From Perkinsus chesapeaki ATCC PRA-425 (Eukaryota > Protista > Perkinsozoa): a stretch of 64,000 bases of DNA. A program made the position numbers and the translations under genes. Location: positions 2,794 through 66,793 of the forward strand of contig JAAPAO010000131.1 of the NCBI GenBank assembly GCA_013115145.1. The letters are read 5' to 3'. Below, piece after piece: positions 1-13,204 of this stretch (its first letter is position 1; each line of letters starts with the position of its first letter). Below the pieces are notes generated by a model that saw only the letters and a program-made list of their open reading frames with translations, did no database searches and was not told the DNA's origin.

Positions 1-2735
1 GGTCGATGACTGGGTCGAAGAGCTCCTTGAAGACCTCGTAACATTCTTCATCACCCGCAACCATTCCGACCGTTTTGATCATTGGATGTCCCTTATTATC
101 CATACCGGTCTTGATACATTTCGCGAGGCCAACTCCATTTGGTGTCTTCTTATCCTTCAAGTTAGCATAGATCTCTGGATTGGCTTTGAGGACATCAGCC
201 ATAACACTGTGGTGTTCAGACAGATCAGGCATCTCAGCCGGACATTCATCATGTGGGAATCCTGGGAATTCGTCGTCGCCTAATCCAGGCATGCTGGAGT
301 AGTCTGCGTGTGCTGGCGTGGAACTCGAGCCGCCTCCAACAAGAGCTTCAAACGCAGCCGCGTCTTCTTTTTGTAGAGCTTGCTCCATCTGGACGATCTT
401 CGAGCATCCCGATATCATAATGTTGACAAGCTCAACTTCAGACTTGCCGATCCTATCACTGTTTGAAATATCCCAGATACCACCAACACTTGCACTATCC
501 ACACCAGCACCGCCGCGAGCTTGCAAATGGAGAGATTTGCAGATGTCTTTGAAATCAGGCCTGGCCGACAGCAGAGGGACCTTCACCATAACTGATGCTC
601 GGAGACCTGTGCCAAGGTTACTCGGACAAGTCAGGACATAACCAAGATGATCATTATGCATGAAGTCGTAGCCTTCCTGTTTCACCACTTCTTGGACCTT
701 GTTCACTGCCTCGCAGAAGCGAGTGAAGACAGCCTTGATATCAGCACCCTTCTGCATAGATATTATTCGCATGTGGTCCTCCTCATTAACCCATACGAGG
801 AAGTTCTTCTGCTCGTTAGCGAATATGCCACGAGCATCGGGCCAGTGTCGGCCCATGCCAGAGGACAACAGCAACGTCGAGTCTGGCTCCTGGAACAAGA
901 AGTGATCTTCGCGCATCTGATGTTCTTCCGCGGCTGTCATTCCGCCAGGTTTCTCGGGATAGCTGTCGGATCCGGCAAGTGGATAATAATCTCCGGCAAG
1001 TTCACCACCTAGTGCCTTAAGTGCCTTTGTGAGGACTCTCTCAACCTCTCGCCTCTCCTCCTTTGTGCACGAAGGAGGAAGTCTAATGCCCCGGACGCTC
1101 CTGCCAGTGCGAACTCTGGTAGAAATTACGAACTCACCAGATGGGTCAATCGGGGTGTCGAGGAGTTTGGTGTAATCCAAGTCGGTTGGATGCTTGGCAT
1201 CTGGTGGGTACCCGCCATGTCGTTGATCGATGACCGGGTCGAAGAGCTCCTTGAAGACTTCATAACTTTCTTCATCACCAGCGACCATCCCGACCGTCTT
1301 GATCATTGGATGCCCCTTATTGTCCATACCGGTCTTGATGCACTTCGCGAGGCTCACTCCATTGGGCGTCTTCTTATCTTTCAGGTTCTCATAGACTTCG
1401 GGGTGAGCTTTCAGGACGTCGGCCATAACACTGTGATGTTCCGACAGATCAGGTATTCCAGCTGGGCATTCGTCATAAGGGAACCCTGGGAATTCGTCAT
1501 CTCCAAGACCAGGCATACTGGAGTAATCCATAGTAGTCGGAGCAGCAGCGCTACCACTGCTTCCCCTAAGGGATTCGAAAGCGGCCAGATCACCACTCTC
1601 CAAAGCTTGCTCCATCTGGACTATCTTCGAGCATCCCGATATCATGATGTTGACAAGTTCAACTTCGGACTTGCCGATCCTATCACTGTTTGAAATATCC
1701 CAGATACCACCAACACTTGCACTATCCACACCAGCACCGCCGCGAGCTTGCAAATGGAGAGATTTGCAGATGTCTTTAAAATCAGGCCTGGCCGACAGCA
1801 GAGGGACCTTTACCATAACTGATGCTCGGAGACCTGTGCCAAGGTTACTCGGACAAGTCAGGACATAACCAAGATGATCATTATGCATGAAGTCGTAGCC
1901 TTCCTGTTTCACCACTTCTTGGACCTTGTTCACTGCCTCACAGAAGCGAGTGAAGACAGCCTTGATATCAGCACCCTTCTGCATAGATATTATTCGCATG
2001 TGGTCCTCCTCATTAACCCATACGAGGAAGTTCTTCTGCTCGTTAGCGAATATGCCACGAGCATCGGGCCAGTGCCGGCCCATGCCAGAGGACAACAGCA
2101 ACGTCGAGTCTGGCTCCTGGAACAAGAAGTGATCTTCGCGCATCTGATGTTCTTCCGCCGCTGTCATTCCGCCAGGTTTCTCGGGATAGCTCTCGGATCC
2201 TGCAAGTGGATAATAATCTCCGGCGAGTTCACCAGTCAATGCCTTTAGAGCCTTGGTGAGTACTCGCTCTACTTCGCGCCTCTCATCCTTCGTGCATGAA
2301 GGAGGAAGTCGAATGCCTCTAACACTCCTTCCTGTCCTAACTCTGGTGGATATGACATACTTCTCAGTTGGATCAATTGCAGTGTCAAGGAGTTTGCTGT
2401 AATCCAAATCAGTCGGATGTTTGGCATCTGGTGGGTATCCACCGTGACGCTGGTCGATGACTGGGTCGAAGAGCTCCTTGAAGACCTCGTAACATTCTTC
2501 ATCACCCGCAACCATCCCGACTGTTTTGATCATTGGATGTCCCTTATTATCCATACCGGTCTTGATACATTTCGCGAGGCCAACTCCATTTGGTGTCTTC
2601 TTATCCTTCAAGTTAGCATAGATCTCTGGATTGGATTTGAGGACATCAGCCATAACACTGTGGTGATCAGACAGACCAGGCATCTCACCCGGGCATTCAT
2701 CATGTGGGAATCCTGGGAATTCGTCGTCGCCTAAT
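1..2735 (-). repeat. Tandem kinase-domain repeat, period 1227/1224 nt
   Basis: 383-1020 is near-identical to 1610-2247 (offset 1227). 1-284 is near-identical to 2452-2735 (offset 2451). Confidence 0.95.
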
Positions 2736-3987
2736 CCGGGCTGTGACGTGTATGCTGTTTCTTCTGCGGGGGTTGCCTCCTTCGCAGCGGAAGGTGCTTC
2801 CGCTGTGGGTTCGCTCTTAGATGGTTCATCTTGTGTACGACTAGCAGATGAGGTATCTAGAAAATCGCGTGCTGTTCAGTTCTTTTACTGTTATTGGCCA
2901 TGTATCAAGAAGTGCGTACTTACTCCTCTTTTGGATATACTCTGCCATGAATGACAGAGGATCCGCAGGACGGTCCGTGAGGAGCTGCTGTACCATCCCC
3001 TGTAAGAGCAGTTGGACTTGAAAATCGTCAAGGTACTTCTTAGCGTTTAAAGCTGCCTGATGTCGCGTTTGGCGTTGGGATTTCCTGATGACAGATGTCT
3101 GGTCTCGATTAACAGTCAGGGGTGTGACAAAATAGTGCCATGGCGGAGTTTATCTCCGTCGCTCGATGACGTCGAGCAGTAAATTACCGATGTCAGGGTT
3201 TATAGGCCAAAACGGAGCGCAAATCTATAAAATTGTCAAAGCCGGGAACGGTACCGTTCCTGACCCACTTCAATTCATTTCCGCCGTCCGTCGACGGCGT
3301 CCTCTACCAATTGACTCGATTCGGCATCACTTATGCCGTAACAGGATAGCACAAGTAACCAGTGAGGAGACTGAGTTTCGACAAGGTAAGAATATGGCGA
3401 TAAAGCAAGTCACCACAATGAGGCTCCTCGGTGTAATTTTATCTATCCACACCGAACGAGCAAGCTGTGGCTGGGCAAAATCACGCGAAGACGCATTTCT
3501 CACTTTTGTTTGACTTGAGGATCTGTATGCTTGAACGTAAGAGATATCTCGATGCTCGGTCCACCGTCTGGGTTCTCCATGGCGATGGATTCCGACTGCT
3601 CGCCAAGGTCTTTGAAATGGTGGAGCGATACTTGTCGACTGCCGACCTGAAGCAGTCGAGCTATCCATACGCAGCATTGTGATCAAATAAGCGAATGCGC
3701 TTGGAATCCCCTGTGAGCATCGATGAAGGAGCAAAAGGCATGGAGGGATAAGGGGCTGTCTTGGAGAGAAAACGAGAAGGCTCCTACCTGAGTGAACAGG
3801 TCGACCTTGCAAGATTCCTGAGAGTCGGAGGGGAATCGGAAAGGCTCGTTCAAGCGCAGCGGAGCTTGGCGTCTGGTCTCTCCAACTCGGATAGACAGAT
3901 AGGCTTTTTCTGAGATAAAGACTGTTTACGATGCAAGGCAGTGGTCTTACCTGGGACATTAGAGGCATCGGTGACGGTGATATCCAT
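1..3987 (-). CDS. Multi-domain creatine-kinase-type phosphagen kinase with N-terminal C2-like and Dpy-30/RIIa-like modules; 3' end beyond window
   Basis: Phase-compatible exons 3987-3951, 3909-3788, 3646-3504, 3084-2924 and 2856-<1 (GT-AG introns). The last exon is one stop-free frame with domain 1, domain 2 and the start of domain 3. Motifs [45 protein letters not shown]. Inter-domain linkers were read in frame. Confidence 0.95.
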
Positions 3988-4542
3988 GGCTGCTGTCCAG
4001 TGGTGCTACCTGGGAAAGTAGGTGGACAAGCAAGTGGACGAAAGCGTGTTCGAAAGAACTGAAAGAAAGGCAACAATCACGAAAAGCAGTGAATGAATTT
4101 GGGCGGTAAGCAAGATGTCATAGAGAGGGAAGAGAAAGAGGATGTACGACTACTGGAAGGCACCAAAGGAGATTTCCGGAGACTTCATTTGAATTCTGCG
4201 CTGATTACGCGCACGCCATTGTAATCGATTTGACGGAGTAGAACAACACAGTTCGCAATGACGTCGAGCAGTATGACGAATGGTTAGTGACCCGCACTAT
4301 GGTAGAGTGAGTGCCTTATAGCACTAATAACACCCGGGCATCTTGTTACCTATCTTACAGTGGCATTGGAACAGCTTAGACCCCAAAAGCTTTGGATTTA
4401 CAATTGCTGCCGTGTTACATGTCACTATGCCATTGTCACTGTGGTGAGCGGTACCTGGAGAAAGGTTATTTTCAATGGGATTCACGGAGGGATGGAAGGG
4501 GCTTCTTGCACTGTAAATGTGGCTTAGAACTTTTTTACTGTA

Positions 4543-7444
4543 ATGGCTAGCAGCGTCCCCGCAATGAACGGATTCGGGGACTCGGCCTTCAGCTACGATC
4601 CAGCTGCCGCACCACAACTACCCCCTACAGGATCACAACAACAGCAACAACCAGCAACTCAATCTCCATTCCATACCGCTTCTCCGCCAACTCAGAAGGA
4701 TGGTACCGCAAATGTAATACTGTGGGCGTCGATACCGAAAATAAATTTTCCTCGTCTTCGTTGGTGACAGGCTCTCGGTTTTGGAGCGCCTGGCAGTGCT
4801 GCCATTCCCGCTGTGTCTGGCAGTGGTGCGGCCTCCGCTGCTCCGGGCAGTGAGAGGGTGAATGATAGCATCTATATTGATTTTGATATTCTCGGGGATG
4901 GCAAAACAGACCCAAATGAGTAGGAAGACTGCGTTGGGGACACTTGAAGAATCCCTCGCTTGCAGGTTGATGAAAACGCTCAAGGAGCAGCTGTCGAATC
5001 CCGAAGCACCTATACGTAGGAACGCCTCTGTCTGGGCTTGTGGGGACATTAGTATTGGTAGATAACGGAATGTTTGGGGTGTTCGCGGACAAAGCTCAGC
5101 TGGAGGATGCTCCCGCTGCTTCCACCAAGGCCGCTGCGCCGGCTGGAAGTGTGACCGGCAACGGTAGTGAGCAATGTGCGGCGATGACGGATCATTATTT
5201 AACCATAGATAATACTGGAGCGAATGACCAGCTTGCGTTGGAGCGTCATTTGGCTGAGCTAGAACTGAACGATGCCAAGGCCCAGCTCGAGGATCTAAAG
5301 AAGCAGTTGTCCGATTCGGGTAGGTGATGACATGCTCTATGTACCGTACCGCTCACGATCAGTATCGGCGCATCAGTCCTCTCTGACGCAGCTGGCAGAT
5401 GCCAGGAATAAACTGGACGATTCAATGGGCCAAGTGGCCAAGCTCGAGGTGCTGTCGGTTCATCGCTGGGAGGATGCTTACACTGTTTTTAGGGTGAACT
5501 TAACAGGGTTAAATCACAGAATAAGACACTTACAACTGACCTTAGTAACGCTAAGGATATGTGGATGAAAGTAGTGCCTAGTGGGACGGGGCATGGGAAC
5601 GAACGACTGCTGCTGTCAGGAATCGAGCCGTGCCTCGAAGCTCCAGGACGAGCTGAACACCAGGGACGATCAAATAGCGGAAGACTCGCGGAGAATGGCG
5701 GAGATGTCGGCAACCAATGAGGTACTGCGGCGGTGGTGGTCTCGACCGGGCCACATGTGGTGGGCAGGCGCTGCAACGTGAAAACGCCCAACTGAAGAAG
5801 CTCTTCGAAGGCTCAGAGCAGGAGGTGGCAGCCCGAGCGAGGGCGGCTGAGAATAGTTTTGGACAGCAAAACGAAAGGTGCTCGACCCGTGGGGGAATTC
5901 ATACCGACTTTTTCTTTGTTAGCTATTTTGGTGGCGCGCGAACAGTACCATCAACATCTAGAGTTCCAGCGGCGATGGCGTCGAGCCTCGGAGAGATGGT
6001 GGCTCCACCTCAGACTGATGGGTACATGAGACCGCCTACCACCGCAACAACCACTGCATTCACTCCAACGCCTACAGCTCGACTAGGTCAGGGGGATATG
6101 GATGTCGCATGTGATTTGGGTACTTCAGGTGGCACCAGCGGCTCCCCGATGAAGACCACTACCTTCCAGCCTCCCACTACGGGTACTGTCGGTGGCGGTG
6201 CTCTCCTTCCACACAATGTTGGATCACCTGCGACTGTCGAGCGATTCCGGGCTCTTATTGGCGCTCAGGAAGGGGTGCTGTATGAGGATGATATACTACA
6301 GGTGATGATGCCATACCCCCGGGAGATCTGAGGGAAGTTTGGTATTCAGATTGGAGTACAATCCTCCTACACGTGCGGTATGGGTGAAGGGCAGGTCTCC
6401 TTGTACTTCGGCAACAAGAGTAAGAAGCATCGCTGTGCAACCGCTCGGTAGGGCGCCTCAGGTTCCGGAGCATTGGACGGCTTCGCGGTAGAGCTAATCT
6501 CGGGGGATGATATCACCCTCACTGCGGAGGAAGCGGTCCCGACGGCTATAAGGGCGAAACAGCAGGTAATGGTGTAGCTAGAGGTGTCAGTGAACTTCCT
6601 AGCTTATTGTGTAGATACGTCTGTCAATGAAGGTTGTCTGTACTAAACCAACCCAGCAGATTCCTATGATGAGTGTGAGTCATTCTCATGGCTGCTGGCA
6701 TCGTCCACATTACAATCAAATCAGATGCGATTCCTTCTGTTCGATAACACCCCGCGGACCCTATCGCTTCGGTTGCCCATTCTCCTATCCAAGTTTATGA
6801 CCCCTGTGGACATCCCTAATGCCGGTGATTTCTTCAGCCTCTGGCGACATCACACGTGAAGAAGCACCTTAGGCAACCAATCTCCTCAGCATCCTTCAGA
6901 TACCATCTTTCGGAGCAATCAGCTGTAGTAAGCATCACAGCTTCCTTCGGCTGCAGGGATAGTCTTCTGGCCTTGGCCCGATCCGCCACGTTGGGAGGGG
7001 TAATAGTTCGGCGCGAGGAGGGTTAGGTGGCAAACTTTTTTGTGAAGGTGTTGAAGCTCCATTCCCAGTTGGATGCGAATCCTAACAACCTAGTTTTATG
7101 CGGCAAGTTCCCAGCAGATAGTCCAGAGGGAATACAGTGCTTCACTCTTCCCAATGCAACAGTAGGCCTCAGTGGGGATGATGAAGGTTATGGCTGCCTT
7201 CAGGTCCTAGTGCGGATCGAGGTCGGTACTGGCCCCCAGCATAGCGGCAAGGCCAGAGTTGCGGTAACAGTACCTTAAAAAATCTGAGTCGCCGATACCT
7301 GTTTCCCTTCAGGTCCGGTCGTCCGAGCCCGTTGTTGCGCTGGCTGTAAGAGACGACCTTCTGCTAGCGTTTGCCGAACTACCCGCTGATGCAGAGCCAA
7401 GCGACCCCAACTTTGAGTCTGGTGCCACGGCGGACAGTCGATAG
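4543..7444 (+). CDS. Coiled-coil protein with C-terminal AP-2 alpha-adaptin appendage (ear) domain, no adaptin trunk
   Basis: Multi-exon. Low-complexity N-terminus, then a coiled coil (LAELELNDAKAQLEDLKKQL; LQDELNTRDDQIAEDSRR). Ear motifs: RFRALIGAQEGVLYEDDILQ|IGVQSSY...GQVSLYFGNK and platform end GYGCL..VRIEVGTG...ARVA|VRSSEPVVALAVRDDL. TAG at 7442-7444. Confidence 0.8.
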
Positions 7445-7738
7445 GCTACTGTTGCTGCTTCCGGTGGTGATGAGTACTATGCAGGTAGTGGCTCGACCCC
7501 TGCCGTTGCCGACCGTTGTTTCTACTCTGTTCGATTACTAGTGATACCAACATTACCTCTGAGGAGCCCATTCATTGCTTTAATGCCGATCGGAATGGTT
7601 CTAGTGAAAGCGTCGTTATAACTGCTACCGTCCCTTCCACAAATTTCCGTGTAAGATCGTCTTGGGCATTCGTCCAGCTTCTCCATTAATATCTCACTTT
7701 TGTTGCGTTGTCCAGTCTGTCTACGGTTCCCTATAGTA

Positions 7739-9104
7739 ATGCAACAAGGACTGCCGTTTAGCGGGCGCGCTCTCACGGCTGTCGGCGCTTCGAGGAGACT
7801 ATCGGCATGTTGCGCCAAGCAGGTGTCGAAGGCAGTCAGTGATAAGTTCGGCAGACGGCACACGTACCTCAGGCTGTCATTAACTGACAAGTGTAATCTG
7901 CGGTGCCAGTACTGTATGCCGCCCGCCGTCTACGGTAGTGAGCCGGAGGAAATCAGGTAACAACGAGAAGAGCTTCTTCTCCCTCTTCTGAAGAGGGTTG
8001 ACGAAGGAAAAGGTTCTGGATGTCAGGCCACCGCCATCGGAGTATCTTACTGCGGATGAGATAGTCTCCTTGGCATCTACTTTTGTTAACGACTTGGGCA
8101 TCACTAAAATACGTTTGACGGGAGGCGAGCCCACGGTAATATGAAGGCCTTAGCCACCTCTGATTGAGGGAAATGTCGGTATGGATGAAATGGCTACAAC
8201 GGGAACCCCACACTGTGGAATTCAGTAGACCGCAACTTCCTCGACGGAAAAGCCCAGCTCGCTATTTAGTTGCGTTAACTAGTAATCTTCCAAAGCTCAG
8301 ATACGATCGGATTTTCCTCGCATCGTCGAAGGTATCGCCGAGAGTTGTCGGCCTCACTTAGACCAGTTTGGCATTACCACCAACGGCGTCCTGCTCGCCC
8401 GTCATCTGCCGGTGATGCGGTCGGCAGGCCTGCTCCATGTGAACGTATCTTTGGATACATTAGTGTCGGCGAAGTTCCCGATGATATCCAACAGACCCGA
8501 AGCCTATTGGGAGAGAGCTCGGCGGTTGATAGACACTTTGCGGAGAGATGAAGACTTCCGTCTGAAAGTGAACTGTGTGGTCATGCGCGGCGTTAACGAC
8601 GACGAGCTGTTGGACTTTGTTGAGCTCACGAGGGAGGAAAATCTCAACTTGCGGTTCATCGAGTACATGCCCTTTTCCGGCAACAACTGGGGCTCCGGCA
8701 AGTTGATGCTATCCAAGCTTGAAATCCTGAATCGAATTCAGGATGCTGTTGGTGCTGATCGGCTCAGTGCAGTAGAGGAGGTCCATCCTAATTCTACAGT
8801 CGGTAAAGAGTACCGTGTTGAGGGATATAAGGGTACCTTCGGCGTTATCAGCTCCATGACGGACAAGTTCTGCGGCGGCTGCAATCGCCTGCGAGTCTCG
8901 GCGGATGGTTCCCTTTATAATTGCTTATTCTCATCTTCTGACTCTGGTTTGTCATTAAGAGATGCCCTAAGGGCAGGCAAGCCTCTCCGGCCCATCCTAG
9001 AGGAGTCTCTGTCCAATAAGGCCTGGGCTTTGGGAGGCCGAGCCGATATGCACGAGTTGGGCAGCAGCTCGAAGGAACTACGGAATATGATGAGCATTGG
9101 TGGT

Positions 9105-9107
<3 letters not shown>
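7739..9107 (+). CDS. moaA: GTP 3',8-cyclase (molybdenum cofactor biosynthesis protein A, MOCS1A/CNX2)
   Basis: [27 protein letters not shown] (radical SAM CxxxCxxC), [34 protein letters not shown] (Cx2Cx13C), C-terminal MMSIGG. Arg/Ser/Ala-rich N-terminus resembles a mitochondrial presequence. Confidence 0.95.

Positions 9108-9170
<63 letters not shown>
9105..9170 (+). repeat. (TGA)22 microsatellite starting at the moaA stop codon
   Basis: Perfect TGA x22 read directly from 9105-9170. Confidence 0.97.
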
Positions 9171-9172
<2 letters not shown>

Positions 9173-9423
9173 TCAAGTGTCTATTTGTCAATATAGTTTT
9201 TAACCTACTCAAACGTTCCTCTATTCGTTCGGCTCGGCTGCGGCTGCGGCTGCTGTCGGGTTATTATTGATCACTTGAGATGTAGCGCTGTCAATTAACT
9301 AAGTAGGGTCAATGCCACAACCGAGGCTCGGTTGTGGCAAGGATCTATGCGTGGCGTTTTGGCAAACTAGAGTTGAGGTTGTTATAATAACAGAGCCTCC
9401 GATACAGTGTGCGCTGCTGCTGT

Positions 9424-12400
9424 ATGTTTACCGATGTTACTGGACAAAGTGCGAATATAGAGGACATCGAGGTCGAGGATCCAGTTGTATTGAGTGTAGA
9501 CGATGATCCTGTGAACCAAATGGTCATACGTAGGCATGAGAGCACCCTCAACCTAGAGCTGGGGTGCTACTGCTGCTGCTGCATTCAGATTCCCTCCTCA
9601 CGGCAGCTGGATACCAAGTAGATCAGGCTATGGACGGCTTCGAATGCCTAGAGTTGGCGCCCGAACCATACCATCTCTGCGATAAACGTTTCGGCAGATA
9701 CTTGGCGAACAACAAGCTACCAAATCTCATCCTGTTGGATGCAGTGATGCCCGGAATGAGCGGGTCGGTGTTTTGCCACTTACAAGCAAGATGCTGATCC
9801 AGATACGATGTAGCTCGCAAACTCCGGGAAGACTATCCCCCACGGTTGCCAATAATGATGATAAGTGCGAAATCGAGTACAGATGACGTGGTCAAGGGCC
9901 TGGGTGTTACGTGAGGAACCTACACCCGCATGTCTATGTCCAAGCCGAGAATCAGGTGTAATGATTACCTTTCAAAGCCTTTTGTGAAGGAAGAGGTTTT
10001 GGCACGCATAGAGACACAGGTAGATCAAACCACTACCAACTTGCCGAAACACCGTCACGTATAGCAGTACGTCGCGATAGAACAATGGGTGAATCCAACA
10101 GATTAACGTGCTCCTCGCTTAGAATACCGGAATCCGGTTGTCTGTTCTACCTCATGTGTCAAACTTCTATGATAAAGGGCACACTTGTGCGCCTTGGCTG
10201 CAGCACTGAACGTTTTATCAACAACCACAATCTCAGGTAAAGCTAAATGCCTACATTGATCGAATACAGCAGAACGCATACGATACTGCGATGCTCGAGT
10301 TCCTTCTTGGGGATGAGCTCATGAACAAGTGCGATGCCGGGCCCGCGAGCTCCCATCACCGCCGGTGACTCGCCGGCACTCCGTACAGGTTCGTGAAGTG
10401 TATCGATGAAAATGGCTCTATCGATTTCGAGAAGGTCGGACAGGAAACCGCAGCTGACCTGTAGCATGCGAAATCAAGTGGTGCTCTTTCCTTCTGCACA
10501 GATGTCGCCAAGGAGGAGGAGGTGCTACTATATTGATGATGAAGACCGCTGAGGATATTGAGAACATGGAGGATCTGAAGTGCTTCTCAAACGCATGTGT
10601 AAAGAGTAGCAACATGAGAAGAGTGACGATGGTATGCAGATCGTCTTTGAGAAGCTACTAACAGAAGCAACTGACAGGCAGGGGGGCCCGGCTCTCCGAC
10701 TAATCCATGCCAACCAGCACTTGTGCGCCCTCGTTCATGGAAGCGCCAATCATGCGGCGGGTAAGTGAATGACTATTTCAAATACAATTACATAACTGTA
10801 TCGTCAAGGGCTGTCAGTAAATAGTGTCTACTAGCACCACTCTACTTTGGTAAAGTTCCGGCGTTCGGGAGTCAATTCAGTGGATACTAGGAAATGGTGC
10901 TTGATCCAGAGCGTCCGTTTTCATTCTCTAGAACGTCCTTGACACTTCATTAGCACTTTCTTGGTATATTCAGATGCTATTTTATTCGCAAAAAGCTATC
11001 TGGAAGCCCTAAGGGCACTTCCAAGCATGGCACGGGTCAGAGTTAAGCTCGTAGTTCACACAGCCTCTGAGAAAAGCACTGGCGCCGGTGATCCGCTGAT
11101 CATTGGGGTGGTTGGGGAGTCAATGCCGAGGTCTGTCACAGTGGGCACAGCAATGTCCAACGCTGGCTATTCGTTCAGGCTATTCGTGGTCAGTAGTGCA
11201 CTGAGGTTGGCTCAGTTCATACTTGATGAAGTGCCGATGGCAAACGTCCAAAGGGACAGTTGCGTGCTTGTTACAGACGCCTGTGTGAATGCCCTTGCAG
11301 AGGAGGTGGGCAATGATAGCAAATGATAGCCACTTCAAACTTATCCATCAGCATCTGTCACAGTGTACTTTGGTAGAGCACGCAGAAGTACGCAAGATGG
11401 GGGACTTCCAGAATAACACGAGAACCGGAGAGCCAGTAAGGGTTGCTCATCCCAGCCGAGTTGGAAGCCTCATCAGGTGCATGTTTTTGCTATGGCTAGA
11501 TCGACTATGTCAGAGCCATCGACATCGAGTAAGTGCACCACAAGAACATAGCGTATGGGTTTGCCGGCCAGGGTACTCTTCCGTACAGCAGCAGCATATG
11601 ATGGCACAGAGCACCCTAGGTGAACATGACGAAGAGATAAGAAATCTGAGAGCTCAAGTCAGAGCAGCAGCCACCCGGGAAGCATGAATGGTACTGTACA
11701 TCTCAGGTAAAAGAACTCACCGAGAACTACAATGAGAAGATGGCCAGAGCGGAGGAGGCAGCGCGAGCCCCTGCACTAGCAGGGGCTCCACCACCAGCTA
11801 CTTGGTGCACTGCAGATGGTGAGGCGCAGCTCCTACGGTAGGGCCAGCTTGGCACGAAGGAACCATTCTCATCGCTAAGGCTGTTTGAGAAGCAAACCGT
11901 CACTAAAAGCCAAAGCAGTGGCTCACGGACGGACCTGCGAGAGGCAAGATTCCCTCTCTTGGCAGTAGCCAGGCTGATAAAACGCAACTCAGGCATTCAA
12001 AAGGAAGCGGACCGCCTCCTTGTCAGATGCTATAAGGTTTTTGAGATCAGAAATGATACGAGCGCTAGGTGAAGATGAATTACTGAGACGCTCTGGATAG
12101 GAGTATCTGTTTCAGATGGAGGAGATACACGAGGAGTTAAGGAGGCCACTGACCTACTAACAATGGAGGCGAGCTAGTTCGATAAGCTTCATTGACACAT
12201 TCTTGCAGATGACATCTATACTAGCGGAAACAGATAGAGCAGAAGGCGAGAGCAGGAGCAAGCAAGAGGAAGGTAAGACAGAGAAATCTGGGTCTGGAAT
12301 AATTAGTTTGAGGACATCACAATAGTATTGTGATGAGTGGTCGGATGGCGATTGTCACAATACCGTCCATCATCGTCCGACCACTCGTACATTCGAATGT

Positions 12401-13204
12401 TGGAGATATCGCCTGAAATTTGGAATGCATAGGTTCTCATTTTCGCGAGTAGCGTATAGCCGTCTTCACGTGACGGGTCCCGCATGTGGCAGATTCATCT
12501 AGCGATGGCGGCATCGGGCAAGAGAGCGGATCTCCTACGGGGCGCCGCGATCGATGGGAGCGTGAGAGGCTGGAGCAGGACGAGCAAGAATGCACGAAAC
12601 TGAGGTGCGTTGCTGTTGCATTGTCGACCTATCGGATGCAGGCGTCGACTGAGAGCTCTGAAGTTGGCTCAAGATGTACGCTAGTCGAGGCCCCTTAATC
12701 AAGTCAGAAATGATTAAGTCCCCTTAATCATTTTCAGAAGCGTGATGATGAGAAGTACAGTAACACCAGAGCTACCAGCCCATCAATAGAAGGCGACCAG
12801 AGCTACGAGGTGTTCAATACCGCATGTTGATATCTGTCAGAAGAGTTTCAGTTACTGAGACTAGCGGCCGCTCGAAGAGAGAACGAATTCCTCCAACGCA
12901 ATCTTCAGGATGCGCTGGATGAGAAAGTCCGGTAACGTGTCAAGTATTTTTCTTCCGTGGCCGAATTCAGGCGTCTTGGGAAGATCTGGCCAGAAGAATG
13001 GCTGAGGATTCCCCATCTGCCGTAAGGGACCGAACTTCGACGGCTATCGTTGAAACCCTCACTCGTATCGAGGAAACAGAAGCTGACATTCAACTGTAAG
13101 CATCACGGCTGCCGATTTTTGATTTCCTCCATCTGGTCAGGCTACGATACAAACTTTTAAAGATGCAGGACGGCTACGACATCCCAGATGATAGTGATAT
13201 CTAA
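9424..13204 (+). CDS. Response-regulator receiver (REC) + degenerate class III nucleotide cyclase + coiled-coil protein
   Basis: Spliced REC: VLSVDDDPVNQ...LILLDAVMPGMSGYDV...IMMISAK...NDYLSKPF. Cyclase-like: NHAADAILFA...KLVVHT...IIGVVGESMPR. Joining to the coiled-coil exons (11580-13204, ending ...DGYDIPDDSDI*) and the start codon are less certain. Confidence 0.75.

What the first reader, a model, noticed from the sequence alone, without database searches (positions are those of the whole stretch)
1..3987. Polyprotein creatine kinase (at least 3 domains) with a C2-like and a Dpy-30/RIIa-like docking module: candidate anchored phosphagen shuttle
Seen: four small exons encode [39 protein letters not shown]...[10 protein letters not shown] (C2-like beta pattern) and [44 protein letters not shown] (Dpy-30/RIIa-like LL..RP.DP..F.A.Y). 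These splice in frame to a linker and at least 3 contiguous kinase domains. Known: sea-urchin sperm flagellar CK is a contiguous trimer anchored by myristoylation, and D/D domains dock enzymes on AKAP-like axonemal scaffolds. Inference: a convergent flagellar phosphocreatine shuttle in zoospores using a different anchor. The ORF track misses it because the frame has no stop inside the window.
Basis: partly seen in the sequence, partly recalled or inferred. Interest (0 to 1): 0.78.

Follow-up and report, generated by a model that had tools for sequence, protein, structure and literature searches.

The report
Docked multi-domain creatine kinase of Perkinsus
A Perkinsus (oyster-parasite genus) gene strings at least five creatine-kinase units behind a small C2-like plus Dpy-30 docking cassette, which dinoflagellates also attach to adenylate kinase and other enzymes, so it is probably a tethered ATP-regenerating enzyme, though its location is untested.

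Summary
It lies on the minus strand. Four small GT..AG exons (3987-2924) splice in frame into one long exon (2856 to 1 and beyond).

- **Docking cassette.** Exon 4 is a Dpy-30 motif (Pfam 30.2 bits, cut-off 22). Exons 1-3 have no Pfam match but model as an eight-stranded C2-type sandwich (Z about 10.5 to solved C2 domains).
- **Kinase array.** The window holds two full creatine-kinase-type domains and the start of a third. The whole contig holds four full domains and half of a fifth, as an A-B-A-B-A repeat. Every complete domain keeps the catalytic and creatine-pocket motifs.
- **Support from reads.** Contigs from two studies carry both junction types. One also carries a likely true stop (...AAFEALLPQSS*).
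- **Relatives.** The architecture recurs in P. marinus (annotated as two genes), Amoebophrya and dinoflagellate transcripts.
- **A portable cassette.** The C2-like/Dpy-30 pair has 555 representative hits. It also heads adenylate kinase, protein kinases and EF-hand proteins. Its closest solved relatives are axonemal docking proteins.

Flagellar anchoring is plausible but not shown: no RNA or localisation data were found. Creatine kinases of Perkinsus are already published, so this is a new variant of a known kind. Overlapping windows of this scan noted the same stretch.

The parts
3951..3987 (-). Exon 1: start codon and [12 protein letters not shown] plus the first base of a split codon. It forms the first strand of the C2-like domain.
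   Evidence: The start matches that of P. marinus and of 17 homologues. The donor is GTAAGA.
3788..3909 (-). Exon 2: (E)[40 protein letters not shown], the core of the C2-like beta sandwich. It holds the invariant S18, R20, G22, F38 and F51.
3504..3646 (-). Exon 3: [11 protein letters not shown]...HTDPQVKQ(K), the last strands of the C2-like domain (to about residue 92) and a short basic linker.
2924..3084 (-). Exon 4: the Dpy-30-type dimerisation/docking motif ([53 protein letters not shown]). It is predicted as three helices, residues 108-159.
   Evidence: Pfam PF05186 scores 30.2 bits against a cut-off of 22. pLDDT is 88-97. The best solved relative by sequence is FAP385, E 4e-8.
2741..2856 (-). 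Start of exon 5: a low-complexity Ser/Thr/Pro/Ala/Glu linker of about 40 residues between the cassette and the first kinase domain.
   Evidence: Its only Pfam match is a spurious sub-threshold Borrelia_orfD hit.
1514..2740 (-). Creatine-kinase domain 1 (type A), complete, with all catalytic motifs.
   Evidence: It scores 437 bits to human mitochondrial creatine kinase 1qk1.
290..1513 (-). Creatine-kinase domain 2 (type B), complete. It is 88% identical in DNA to type A.
1..289 (-). First 96 codons of creatine-kinase domain 3 (type A). The frame continues 2793 bases beyond the window through domains 3 and 4 and half of domain 5, to the contig end.
   Evidence: The B-to-A junction contig (window 257-406) is exact in runs of two studies.

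Best explanation
This is one five-exon gene of a Perkinsus species, assembly GCA_013115145.1.

Shown:
- It encodes an N-terminal cassette followed by a flexible linker and a head-to-tail array of catalytically intact creatine-kinase-type phosphagen kinase domains.
- The cassette is a compact C2-type beta sandwich of about 95 residues, followed directly by a three-helix Dpy-30 motif.
- Five domain starts are assembled, in the order A-B-A-B-A, which implies roughly 2200 residues.

Inferred mechanism:
- The Dpy-30 motif forms a homodimeric four-helix bundle. Its groove clamps an amphipathic helix of a scaffold protein, as in radial-spoke and central-pair docking of AK7, AK8 and NME5.
- The neighbouring C2-like domain adds a second contact, to membrane or microtubule.
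- A dimer would therefore fix about ten kinase active sites at one address. There they would regenerate ATP from phosphocreatine next to an ATP consumer.
- The most likely address is the axoneme of the biflagellate zoospore.

The cassette is a portable address tag. Dinoflagellates put the same pair in front of 1-4 kinase domains, adenylate kinase, protein kinases and EF-hand arrays.
For: Gene structure:
- GT..AG introns, joins in frame, and each exon matches the gene call P0006.
- P. marinus has the same five-exon layout.
- The same cassette plus three kinase domains occurs in Amoebophrya P0001 and in Polykrikos kofoidii Trinity transcripts with 2, 3 and 4 domains.

Kinase identity:
- Pfam E-values of 3e-133 and 1e-78.
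- 430-437 bits per domain to true creatine kinases, against 365 for lombricine kinase, 340 for glycocyamine kinase and about 255 for arginine kinases.
- No deletion in the guanidino-specificity region.
- GHPMIKTVG and RGGAGVD keep the Ile69 and Val325/Asp326 positions.
- CPSNLGT, NEEDH and RVRTGRS are present in all four complete domains.

The array is real:
- The 2451-nt two-domain units differ at 38 sites, seen as 26 synonymous and 9 non-synonymous codon differences.
- The B-to-A junction is exact in contigs of two studies.
- Both A-to-B junction variants are present, each at about the word depth of the single-copy flank.
- A loose end reads ...AAFE|ALLPQSS*, like the P. marinus end ...AAFEAQLPTSD*.

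Cassette:
- The AlphaFold2 model has pLDDT 83.5.
- All 50 top matches are C2 domains, with Z 8.8-10.7 and rmsd 2.3-3 A over 90-99 residues.
- The ESM Atlas structure search also lists C2, NT-C2 and SPATA6.
- Dpy-30 scores above the Pfam cut-off.

Portability:
- 555 representative proteins match the beta domain.
- Nearly all listed hits long enough to include the region have a Dpy-30-like motif about 105-160 residues in.
- Partners are adenylate kinase, protein kinases and EF-hands.

Axonemal flavour:
- The best solved relatives are FAP385, AK8, DPY30, PKA RI-alpha, AK7 and NME5.
- A creatine kinase is up-regulated in Amoebophrya dinospores.
Against: - There is no expression or localisation evidence for this gene in Perkinsus. 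No RNA run held it.
- Dpy-30 domains also act outside cilia, in COMPASS and at the Golgi.
- The C2-like domain lacks a conserved aspartate cluster, so its ligand is unknown.
- Cultured Perkinsus are non-flagellate trophozoites. Creatine kinases were characterised from P. marinus (Fraga, Ellington and Suzuki 2022, PMID 35598705, seen only as a citation), so a non-flagellar role is possible.
- The domain count rests on a short-read-fragmented repeat at a contig end, and the P. marinus assembly shows only two domains.
- Word depth of contigs is not a sound copy-number measure. The tool itself warns of this.
Confidence: 0.55

Rival explanations
1. The protein is the same, but the cassette sends it to a non-flagellar site. 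Candidates are the cortical alveoli or plasma membrane (through the C2-like domain) or the apical complex. There it would buffer ATP in trophozoites or during zoosporulation.
For: C2 domains usually bind membranes, and the top fold matches are cPLA2, dysferlin, Munc13 and E-Syt. Creatine kinases were studied in cultured, non-flagellate P. marinus, judging from the paper title cited. Some cassette partners (MORN, SH3, ankyrin, ubiquitin) are not specifically axonemal.
Against: No conserved calcium-binding aspartates. The docking motif's best solved relatives are axonemal proteins. C2-type domains also sit on centriolar and ciliary microtubules: CEP120 C2A at Z 9.4 and a ciliary-tip central-pair protein at Z 10.2.
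Confidence: 0.25
2. The cassette is not an address. The Dpy-30 motif only dimerises an otherwise monomeric kinase chain, and the enzyme is a soluble cytosolic ATP buffer.
For: The published title calls P. marinus creatine kinases monomeric. Dpy-30 and RIIa domains are obligate dimerisers (established knowledge).
Against: The same cassette heads unrelated enzymes such as adenylate kinase, protein kinases and EF-hand arrays. That fits an address tag better than a kinase-specific oligomerisation need. The dimer groove of this domain class binds an amphipathic helix of a partner in the well-studied cases.
Confidence: 0.13
3. Artefact reading: the N-terminal exons are a separate small gene, as annotated in P. 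marinus, and/or the array beyond two or three domains is an assembly duplication of alleles.
For: The P. marinus annotation splits the locus into a 101-aa and an 878-aa gene and shows two domains followed by a stop. The array lies at a contig end, and short-read contigs break inside it.
Against: Splicing is in frame with canonical sites. Contiguous cassette-kinase transcripts exist in Polykrikos, and a gene model in Amoebophrya. The P. marinus 878-aa model begins inside the Dpy-30 motif (MATYIDKR), so it is truncated. The B-to-A junction cannot exist in a two-domain gene, yet it is exact in two studies. Two A-to-B variants each sit at about flank depth. The repeat units differ mostly at synonymous sites.
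Confidence: 0.05

Closest known systems
Sea-urchin and other metazoan flagellar creatine kinase (contiguous three-domain, N-myristoylated)
   Same: Several complete creatine-kinase domains on one chain. About 50% identity. The presumed role is a fixed terminus of a phosphocreatine shuttle.
   Different: The anchor differs: the metazoan proteins start MGCxxS, while this one starts MDITV with a C2-like/Dpy-30 cassette. Its domains form a separate clade from the metazoan repeats, so the arrays arose independently. It has five or more domains, not three.
Axonemal nucleotide-handling enzymes docked by Dpy-30/RIIa-type domains (AK7, AK8, NME5; also radial-spoke FAP385)
   Same: An ATP-homeostasis enzyme fused to a Dpy-30-type docking helix pair. 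These are the closest solved sequences to the motif, with E from 4e-8 to 0.03.
   Different: The enzyme here is creatine kinase, the motif is N-terminal, and it is always preceded by a C2-like domain. Docking in Perkinsus is untested.
Perkinsus marinus creatine kinases (Fraga, Ellington and Suzuki 2022, Comp Biochem Physiol B 262:110758)
   Same: Same genus and the same enzyme family. The P. marinus orthologue P0003 is 92% identical.
   Different: I could not read the paper. The public P. marinus model lacks the cassette because the locus is split into two gene calls, and it shows two domains. Whether the paper noticed the cassette is unknown to me.
C2 domains (cPLA2, dysferlin C2A, Munc13 C2B, CEP120 C2A)
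   Same: Eight-stranded beta sandwich, Z 9.4-10.7, rmsd 2.3-3 A over 90-99 residues.
   Different: No Pfam C2 match. It is about 95 residues long rather than 120-135, with short loops. The calcium-binding aspartate set is not conserved.

Membership tests
Phosphagen (ATP:guanidino) kinase | N-terminal helical domain (PF02807) plus C-terminal catalytic domain (PF00217) | tested here: met
   PF00217 at 441.8 bits in two stretches, PF02807 at 260 bits in three stretches.
Phosphagen (ATP:guanidino) kinase | Catalytic motifs: reactive Cys (CPSNLGT), NEEDH, and the phosphate-binding arginines (RVRTGRS, R after NEEDH, GLRA) | tested here: met
   all are present in each of the four complete domains. 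The partial fifth domain keeps those it reaches.
Creatine kinase (as opposed to arginine, glycocyamine, lombricine or taurocyamine kinase) | Full-length guanidino-specificity region, and the Ile69 and Val325 pocket residues | tested here: met
   gap-free alignment to human uMtCK over [25 protein letters not shown], with rggagvd against rgtggvd. Per-domain score is 430-437 bits to creatine kinases, against 340-365 to glycocyamine and lombricine kinases.
Creatine kinase | Measured activity with creatine | not testable with these tools
   Only the title of Fraga et al. 2022 was seen, as a citation. The paper is not held.
Dpy-30 motif (PF05186) | Profile match above Pfam's gathering score | tested here: met
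   30.2 bits against a cut-off of 22, over profile positions 2-39 of 42.
Dpy-30 motif (PF05186) | Helical hairpin with an extra N-terminal helix, forming a homodimer that binds an amphipathic helix | tested here: inconclusive
   Three helices are predicted with pLDDT 88-97. Dimerisation and partner binding cannot be tested here.
RIIa (PF02197) | Profile match above the gathering score | tested here: not met
   21.2 bits against a cut-off of 22.4, so just under.
C2 domain | Eight-stranded antiparallel beta sandwich of C2 topology | tested here: met
   all top matches are C2 domains, with Z up to 10.7.
C2 domain | Sequence-profile membership (PF00168 or relatives) | tested here: not met
   exons 2 and 3, searched separately, match no Pfam family. 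The joined sequence was not searched.
C2 domain | Cluster of about five Asp/Asn in the top loops that binds calcium | tested here: not met
   only D/E13 and E52 are conserved in the candidate top loops. The conserved charges are mostly basic (R20, R25, R26, K/R31, K53).
Metazoan flagellar creatine kinase | N-terminal myristoylation signal (MGxxxS/T) | tested here: not met
   The protein starts MDITVTD. Metazoan and some protist multi-domain forms start MGC.
Metazoan flagellar creatine kinase | Domains orthologous to the metazoan D1-D3 repeats | tested here: not met
   the metazoan-type clade (SH-aLRT 99) and the alveolate/protist clade (95) are separate, and the Perkinsus domains cluster together (99).

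The most novel reading that the evidence does not exclude
The C2-like/Dpy-30 pair is an undescribed, lineage-wide (perkinsids, Syndiniales, core dinoflagellates) address cassette. It would recruit a whole ATP-buffering and signalling set to one site on the flagellar apparatus: creatine kinase arrays, adenylate kinase, protein kinases and EF-hand proteins. In Perkinsus the kinase array has grown by recent unit duplication into a dimeric hub with about ten active sites, among the largest contiguous phosphagen kinases known.
Probability: 0.35. Interest if true: 0.72.

Novelty: new variant of a known kind. Interest (0 to 1): 0.6.

Why it matters
- Phosphocreatine shuttles with anchored multi-domain kinases were worked out in animal sperm. 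A separately evolved version in the sister lineage of dinoflagellates, using a docking cassette instead of a lipid anchor, would show that tethering ATP regeneration beside motors is a recurrent solution.
- The work also defines a portable C2-like/Dpy-30 cassette with hundreds of members. This gives a testable targeting signal in organisms where P. marinus transfection tools exist (PMC9678886).
- It corrects public gene models. The P. marinus locus is split in two, and this genome's own call splices out every catalytic domain.

Tried and rejected
- **RNA support.** The run search found no RNA holder. The two small runs guessed to be RNA gave nothing on the gene and only one spliced contig on the neighbouring gene. 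Exon joins therefore rest on splice signals, on conservation and on relatives' transcripts.
- **The key paper.** Fraga et al. 2022 is not held. Four further literature searches found no description of a creatine kinase with a Dpy-30 or C2 module.
- **Word search restricted to residues 1-160.** It returned only the query and one MMETSP transcript. Two cluster look-ups named only Polykrikos kofoidii and an unnamed dinoflagellate (Dinoflagellata sp. MGD) and no other taxon.
- **Pfam on exons 2 and 3.** No match.
- **Rejected as spurious.** The sub-threshold Borrelia_orfD hit on the linker, and the PKD/cadherin-bearing weak hits in the representative search, which are generic bacterial beta sandwiches.
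- **Rejected gene model.** The internal splicing of P0006 removes every catalytic domain. The genomic frame is open for 1889 codons and is 92% identical to P. marinus protein throughout.
- **Copy number from depth.** I used it only as a consistency check, because the tool warns against it.
- **Joined model.** Exons were searched singly by reference, and the stored gene call P0006 served for the cassette.
Full report
**Where and what.** The feature lies on the minus strand. Translating the reverse complement of window 1-4100 shows one frame open from about 2870 down to base 1. The ORF listing does not list the frame because it runs off the window.

I placed the splice sites by eye and then checked them. 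The exons are 3987-3951, 3909-3788, 3646-3504, 3084-2924 and 2856 onward. The introns are 41, 141, 419 and 67 nt, each GT..AG, and the joins keep the frame. The genome's own gene call is P0006, from contig JAAPAO010000131.1 of assembly GCA_013115145.1. It uses exactly these four joins, and each exon's translation sits at residues 1, 14, 54, 102 and 156 of P0006. The stored protein P0006 stood in for the cassette.

**Organism.** The best named relative is a Perkinsus marinus 'creatine kinase, putative', at 92% identity. Another note of this scan calls the genome P. chesapeaki. I did not verify the species.

**The kinase array.** Pfam finds three N-terminal and two catalytic phosphagen-kinase domains in the 951 in-window codons. 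The contig extends 2793 bases beyond the window start. On it the frame stays open for 1889 codons to the very end of the contig, with five domain starts and four complete domains.

The DNA is a higher-order tandem repeat of 2451 nt, made of one A-type and one B-type domain. A and B are about 88% identical, and successive units are about 98.5% identical. Units 1 and 2 differ at 38 sites, seen as 26 synonymous and 9 non-synonymous codon differences. All complete domains keep [34 protein letters not shown] and RGGAGVD.

Against solved structures each domain scores 430-437 bits to true creatine kinases. That is clearly above lombricine kinase (365), glycocyamine kinase (340) and arginine kinases (about 255). 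The alignment to human mitochondrial creatine kinase has no gap in the guanidino-specificity region and keeps the Ile69 and Val325/Asp326 positions. The only indel is a 10-residue insertion, GSxSYPEKPG. Creatine is therefore the most likely substrate. A 2022 paper on P. marinus creatine kinases exists, but I saw only its citation.

**Is the array real?** Only assembled contigs of public runs were available, so depth is a weak measure. Four observations still bear on the question.
- In runs of two different studies the unique contig begins at 2708, and the array breaks into short contigs.
- The B-to-A linker junction (257-406) is exact in both studies. That junction cannot exist in a two-domain gene.
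- The A-to-B junction (1445-1566) occurs as two variants. They differ at exactly the six positions that separate A1-B2 from A3-B4 on the contig. Each variant has about the word depth of the single-copy flank.
- One contig leaves the array at 1574 and reads ...[15 protein letters not shown]|ALLPQSS-stop. This closely resembles the P. marinus end ...AAFEAQLPTSD-stop and probably marks the true C-terminus.

Together this fits A-B-A-B-A, a protein of roughly 2200 residues, but only long reads can settle the count. The P. marinus assembly shows two domains.

**The N-terminal cassette.** Exon 4 matches Pfam Dpy-30 above the cut-off (30.2 against 22 bits), while RIIa falls just below its cut-off. Exons 2 and 3 have no Pfam match.

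An alignment of 18 homologous N-termini (A1) gave an AlphaFold2 model with mean pLDDT 83.5. It has eight strands in residues 2-92 and three helices in residues 108-159. Foldseek and the second-look aligner return only C2 domains. Z is 8.8-10.7 and rmsd 2.3-3 A over 90-99 residues. Hits include cPLA2, dysferlin, Munc13, centriolar CEP120 C2A and a ciliary-tip central-pair protein. The ESM Atlas structure search agrees.

The domain is short, and no conserved aspartate cluster is seen. The conserved charges are mainly basic. 'C2-like' is therefore right as a fold, but calcium-dependent lipid binding is not implied.

**The cassette is portable.** A profile of the beta domain alone was searched against 1.84 billion representative proteins. 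It found 555 hits at E of 0.001 or better. In nearly all listed hits that are long enough to include it, a Dpy-30-like motif follows about 105-160 residues in. Downstream partners are:
- one, two, three or four creatine-kinase domains;
- adenylate kinase (P0182);
- protein kinases (P0154, P0186);
- an EF-hand array (P0211);
- MORN, SH3, ankyrin, GYF or ubiquitin domains;
- often nothing recognisable.

Named sources are Amoebophrya, Polykrikos kofoidii transcripts and an unnamed dinoflagellate. Because several of these are transcript assemblies, the fusion of cassette and kinase is shown at RNA level in relatives. P. marinus has the same five exons, but its annotation splits them into a 101-aa gene and an 878-aa gene that starts inside the Dpy-30 motif.

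**Relation to animal flagellar creatine kinase.** In a tree of 88 single domains, the metazoan-type repeats and the alveolate/protist repeats form separate clades (SH-aLRT 99 and 95). The Perkinsus domains cluster together, and so do the three Amoebophrya domains. Core dinoflagellates show position-specific groups. The arrays therefore arose, or were homogenised, independently. Animal forms, and some protist forms, begin MGCxxS, a myristoylation signal. This protein begins MDITV. 'Convergent, with a different anchor' is a fair description.

**How it probably works.** What is shown: the architecture, intact catalytic motifs, a Dpy-30 motif, a C2 fold and cassette portability.

What is inferred from established knowledge of Dpy-30/RIIa domains: the motif dimerises and binds an amphipathic helix of a scaffold. 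This would fix a dimer with about ten active sites at one place.

The axoneme is the favoured address for three reasons.
- The motif's closest solved relatives are axonemal docking proteins and docked nucleotide enzymes: FAP385, AK8, AK7 and NME5.
- The same cassette carries adenylate kinase.
- A creatine kinase rises in swimming Amoebophrya dinospores.

No data place this protein in Perkinsus flagella. A cortical or membrane address, or plain dimerisation of a soluble enzyme, remain open.

**Novelty.** Each of the following is already known: creatine kinases in Perkinsus, contiguous multi-domain flagellar kinases, and Dpy-30-docked nucleotide enzymes. New, as far as my searches reach, are their combination, the C2-like/Dpy-30 cassette as a recurring unit, and an array of five or more domains. 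I rate it a new variant of a known kind. Overlapping windows of this scan noted the same stretch.

Noticed in passing
window 4300-12900 (L001 1-9445): Gene order next to the kinase gene matches P. marinus: an Alpha_adaptinC2 protein, then a Radical_SAM/Mob_synth_C (MoaA-like) protein. In this genome the two are called as one 1073-aa product. In P. marinus they are two genes, so one annotation is probably wrong.
   Followed up: no
window 5568-5619: A contig from a small run of the same species label (guessed to be RNA, 90-95% alike) skips 49 bases here. A GTAGTG...TGTCAG intron fits within two bases. This looks like a spliced transcript of the neighbouring plus-strand gene.
   Followed up: partly
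P0121 (2422 aa), P0159, P0194, P0198, P0242 (relatives, not in the window): Some dinoflagellate-type proteins carry two to four copies of the C2-like/Dpy-30 cassette on one chain with no other recognisable domain. They could be scaffolds or multivalent adaptors.
   Followed up: no
P0092 (Rhodelphis marinus, 1246 aa) and P0004/P0071/P0080 (relatives): Other unusual phosphagen-kinase architectures turned up. One fuses MORN repeats, adenylate kinase and two kinase domains. Others are four- and five-domain chains, including one from the krill Meganyctiphanes norvegica.
   Followed up: no
window 1514-2740 and 290-1513: Both domain types carry a 10-residue insertion (GS[ED]SYPEKPG) relative to vertebrate creatine kinases, between YYPL and the MTxxE helix. 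Its structural role is unknown.
   Followed up: no
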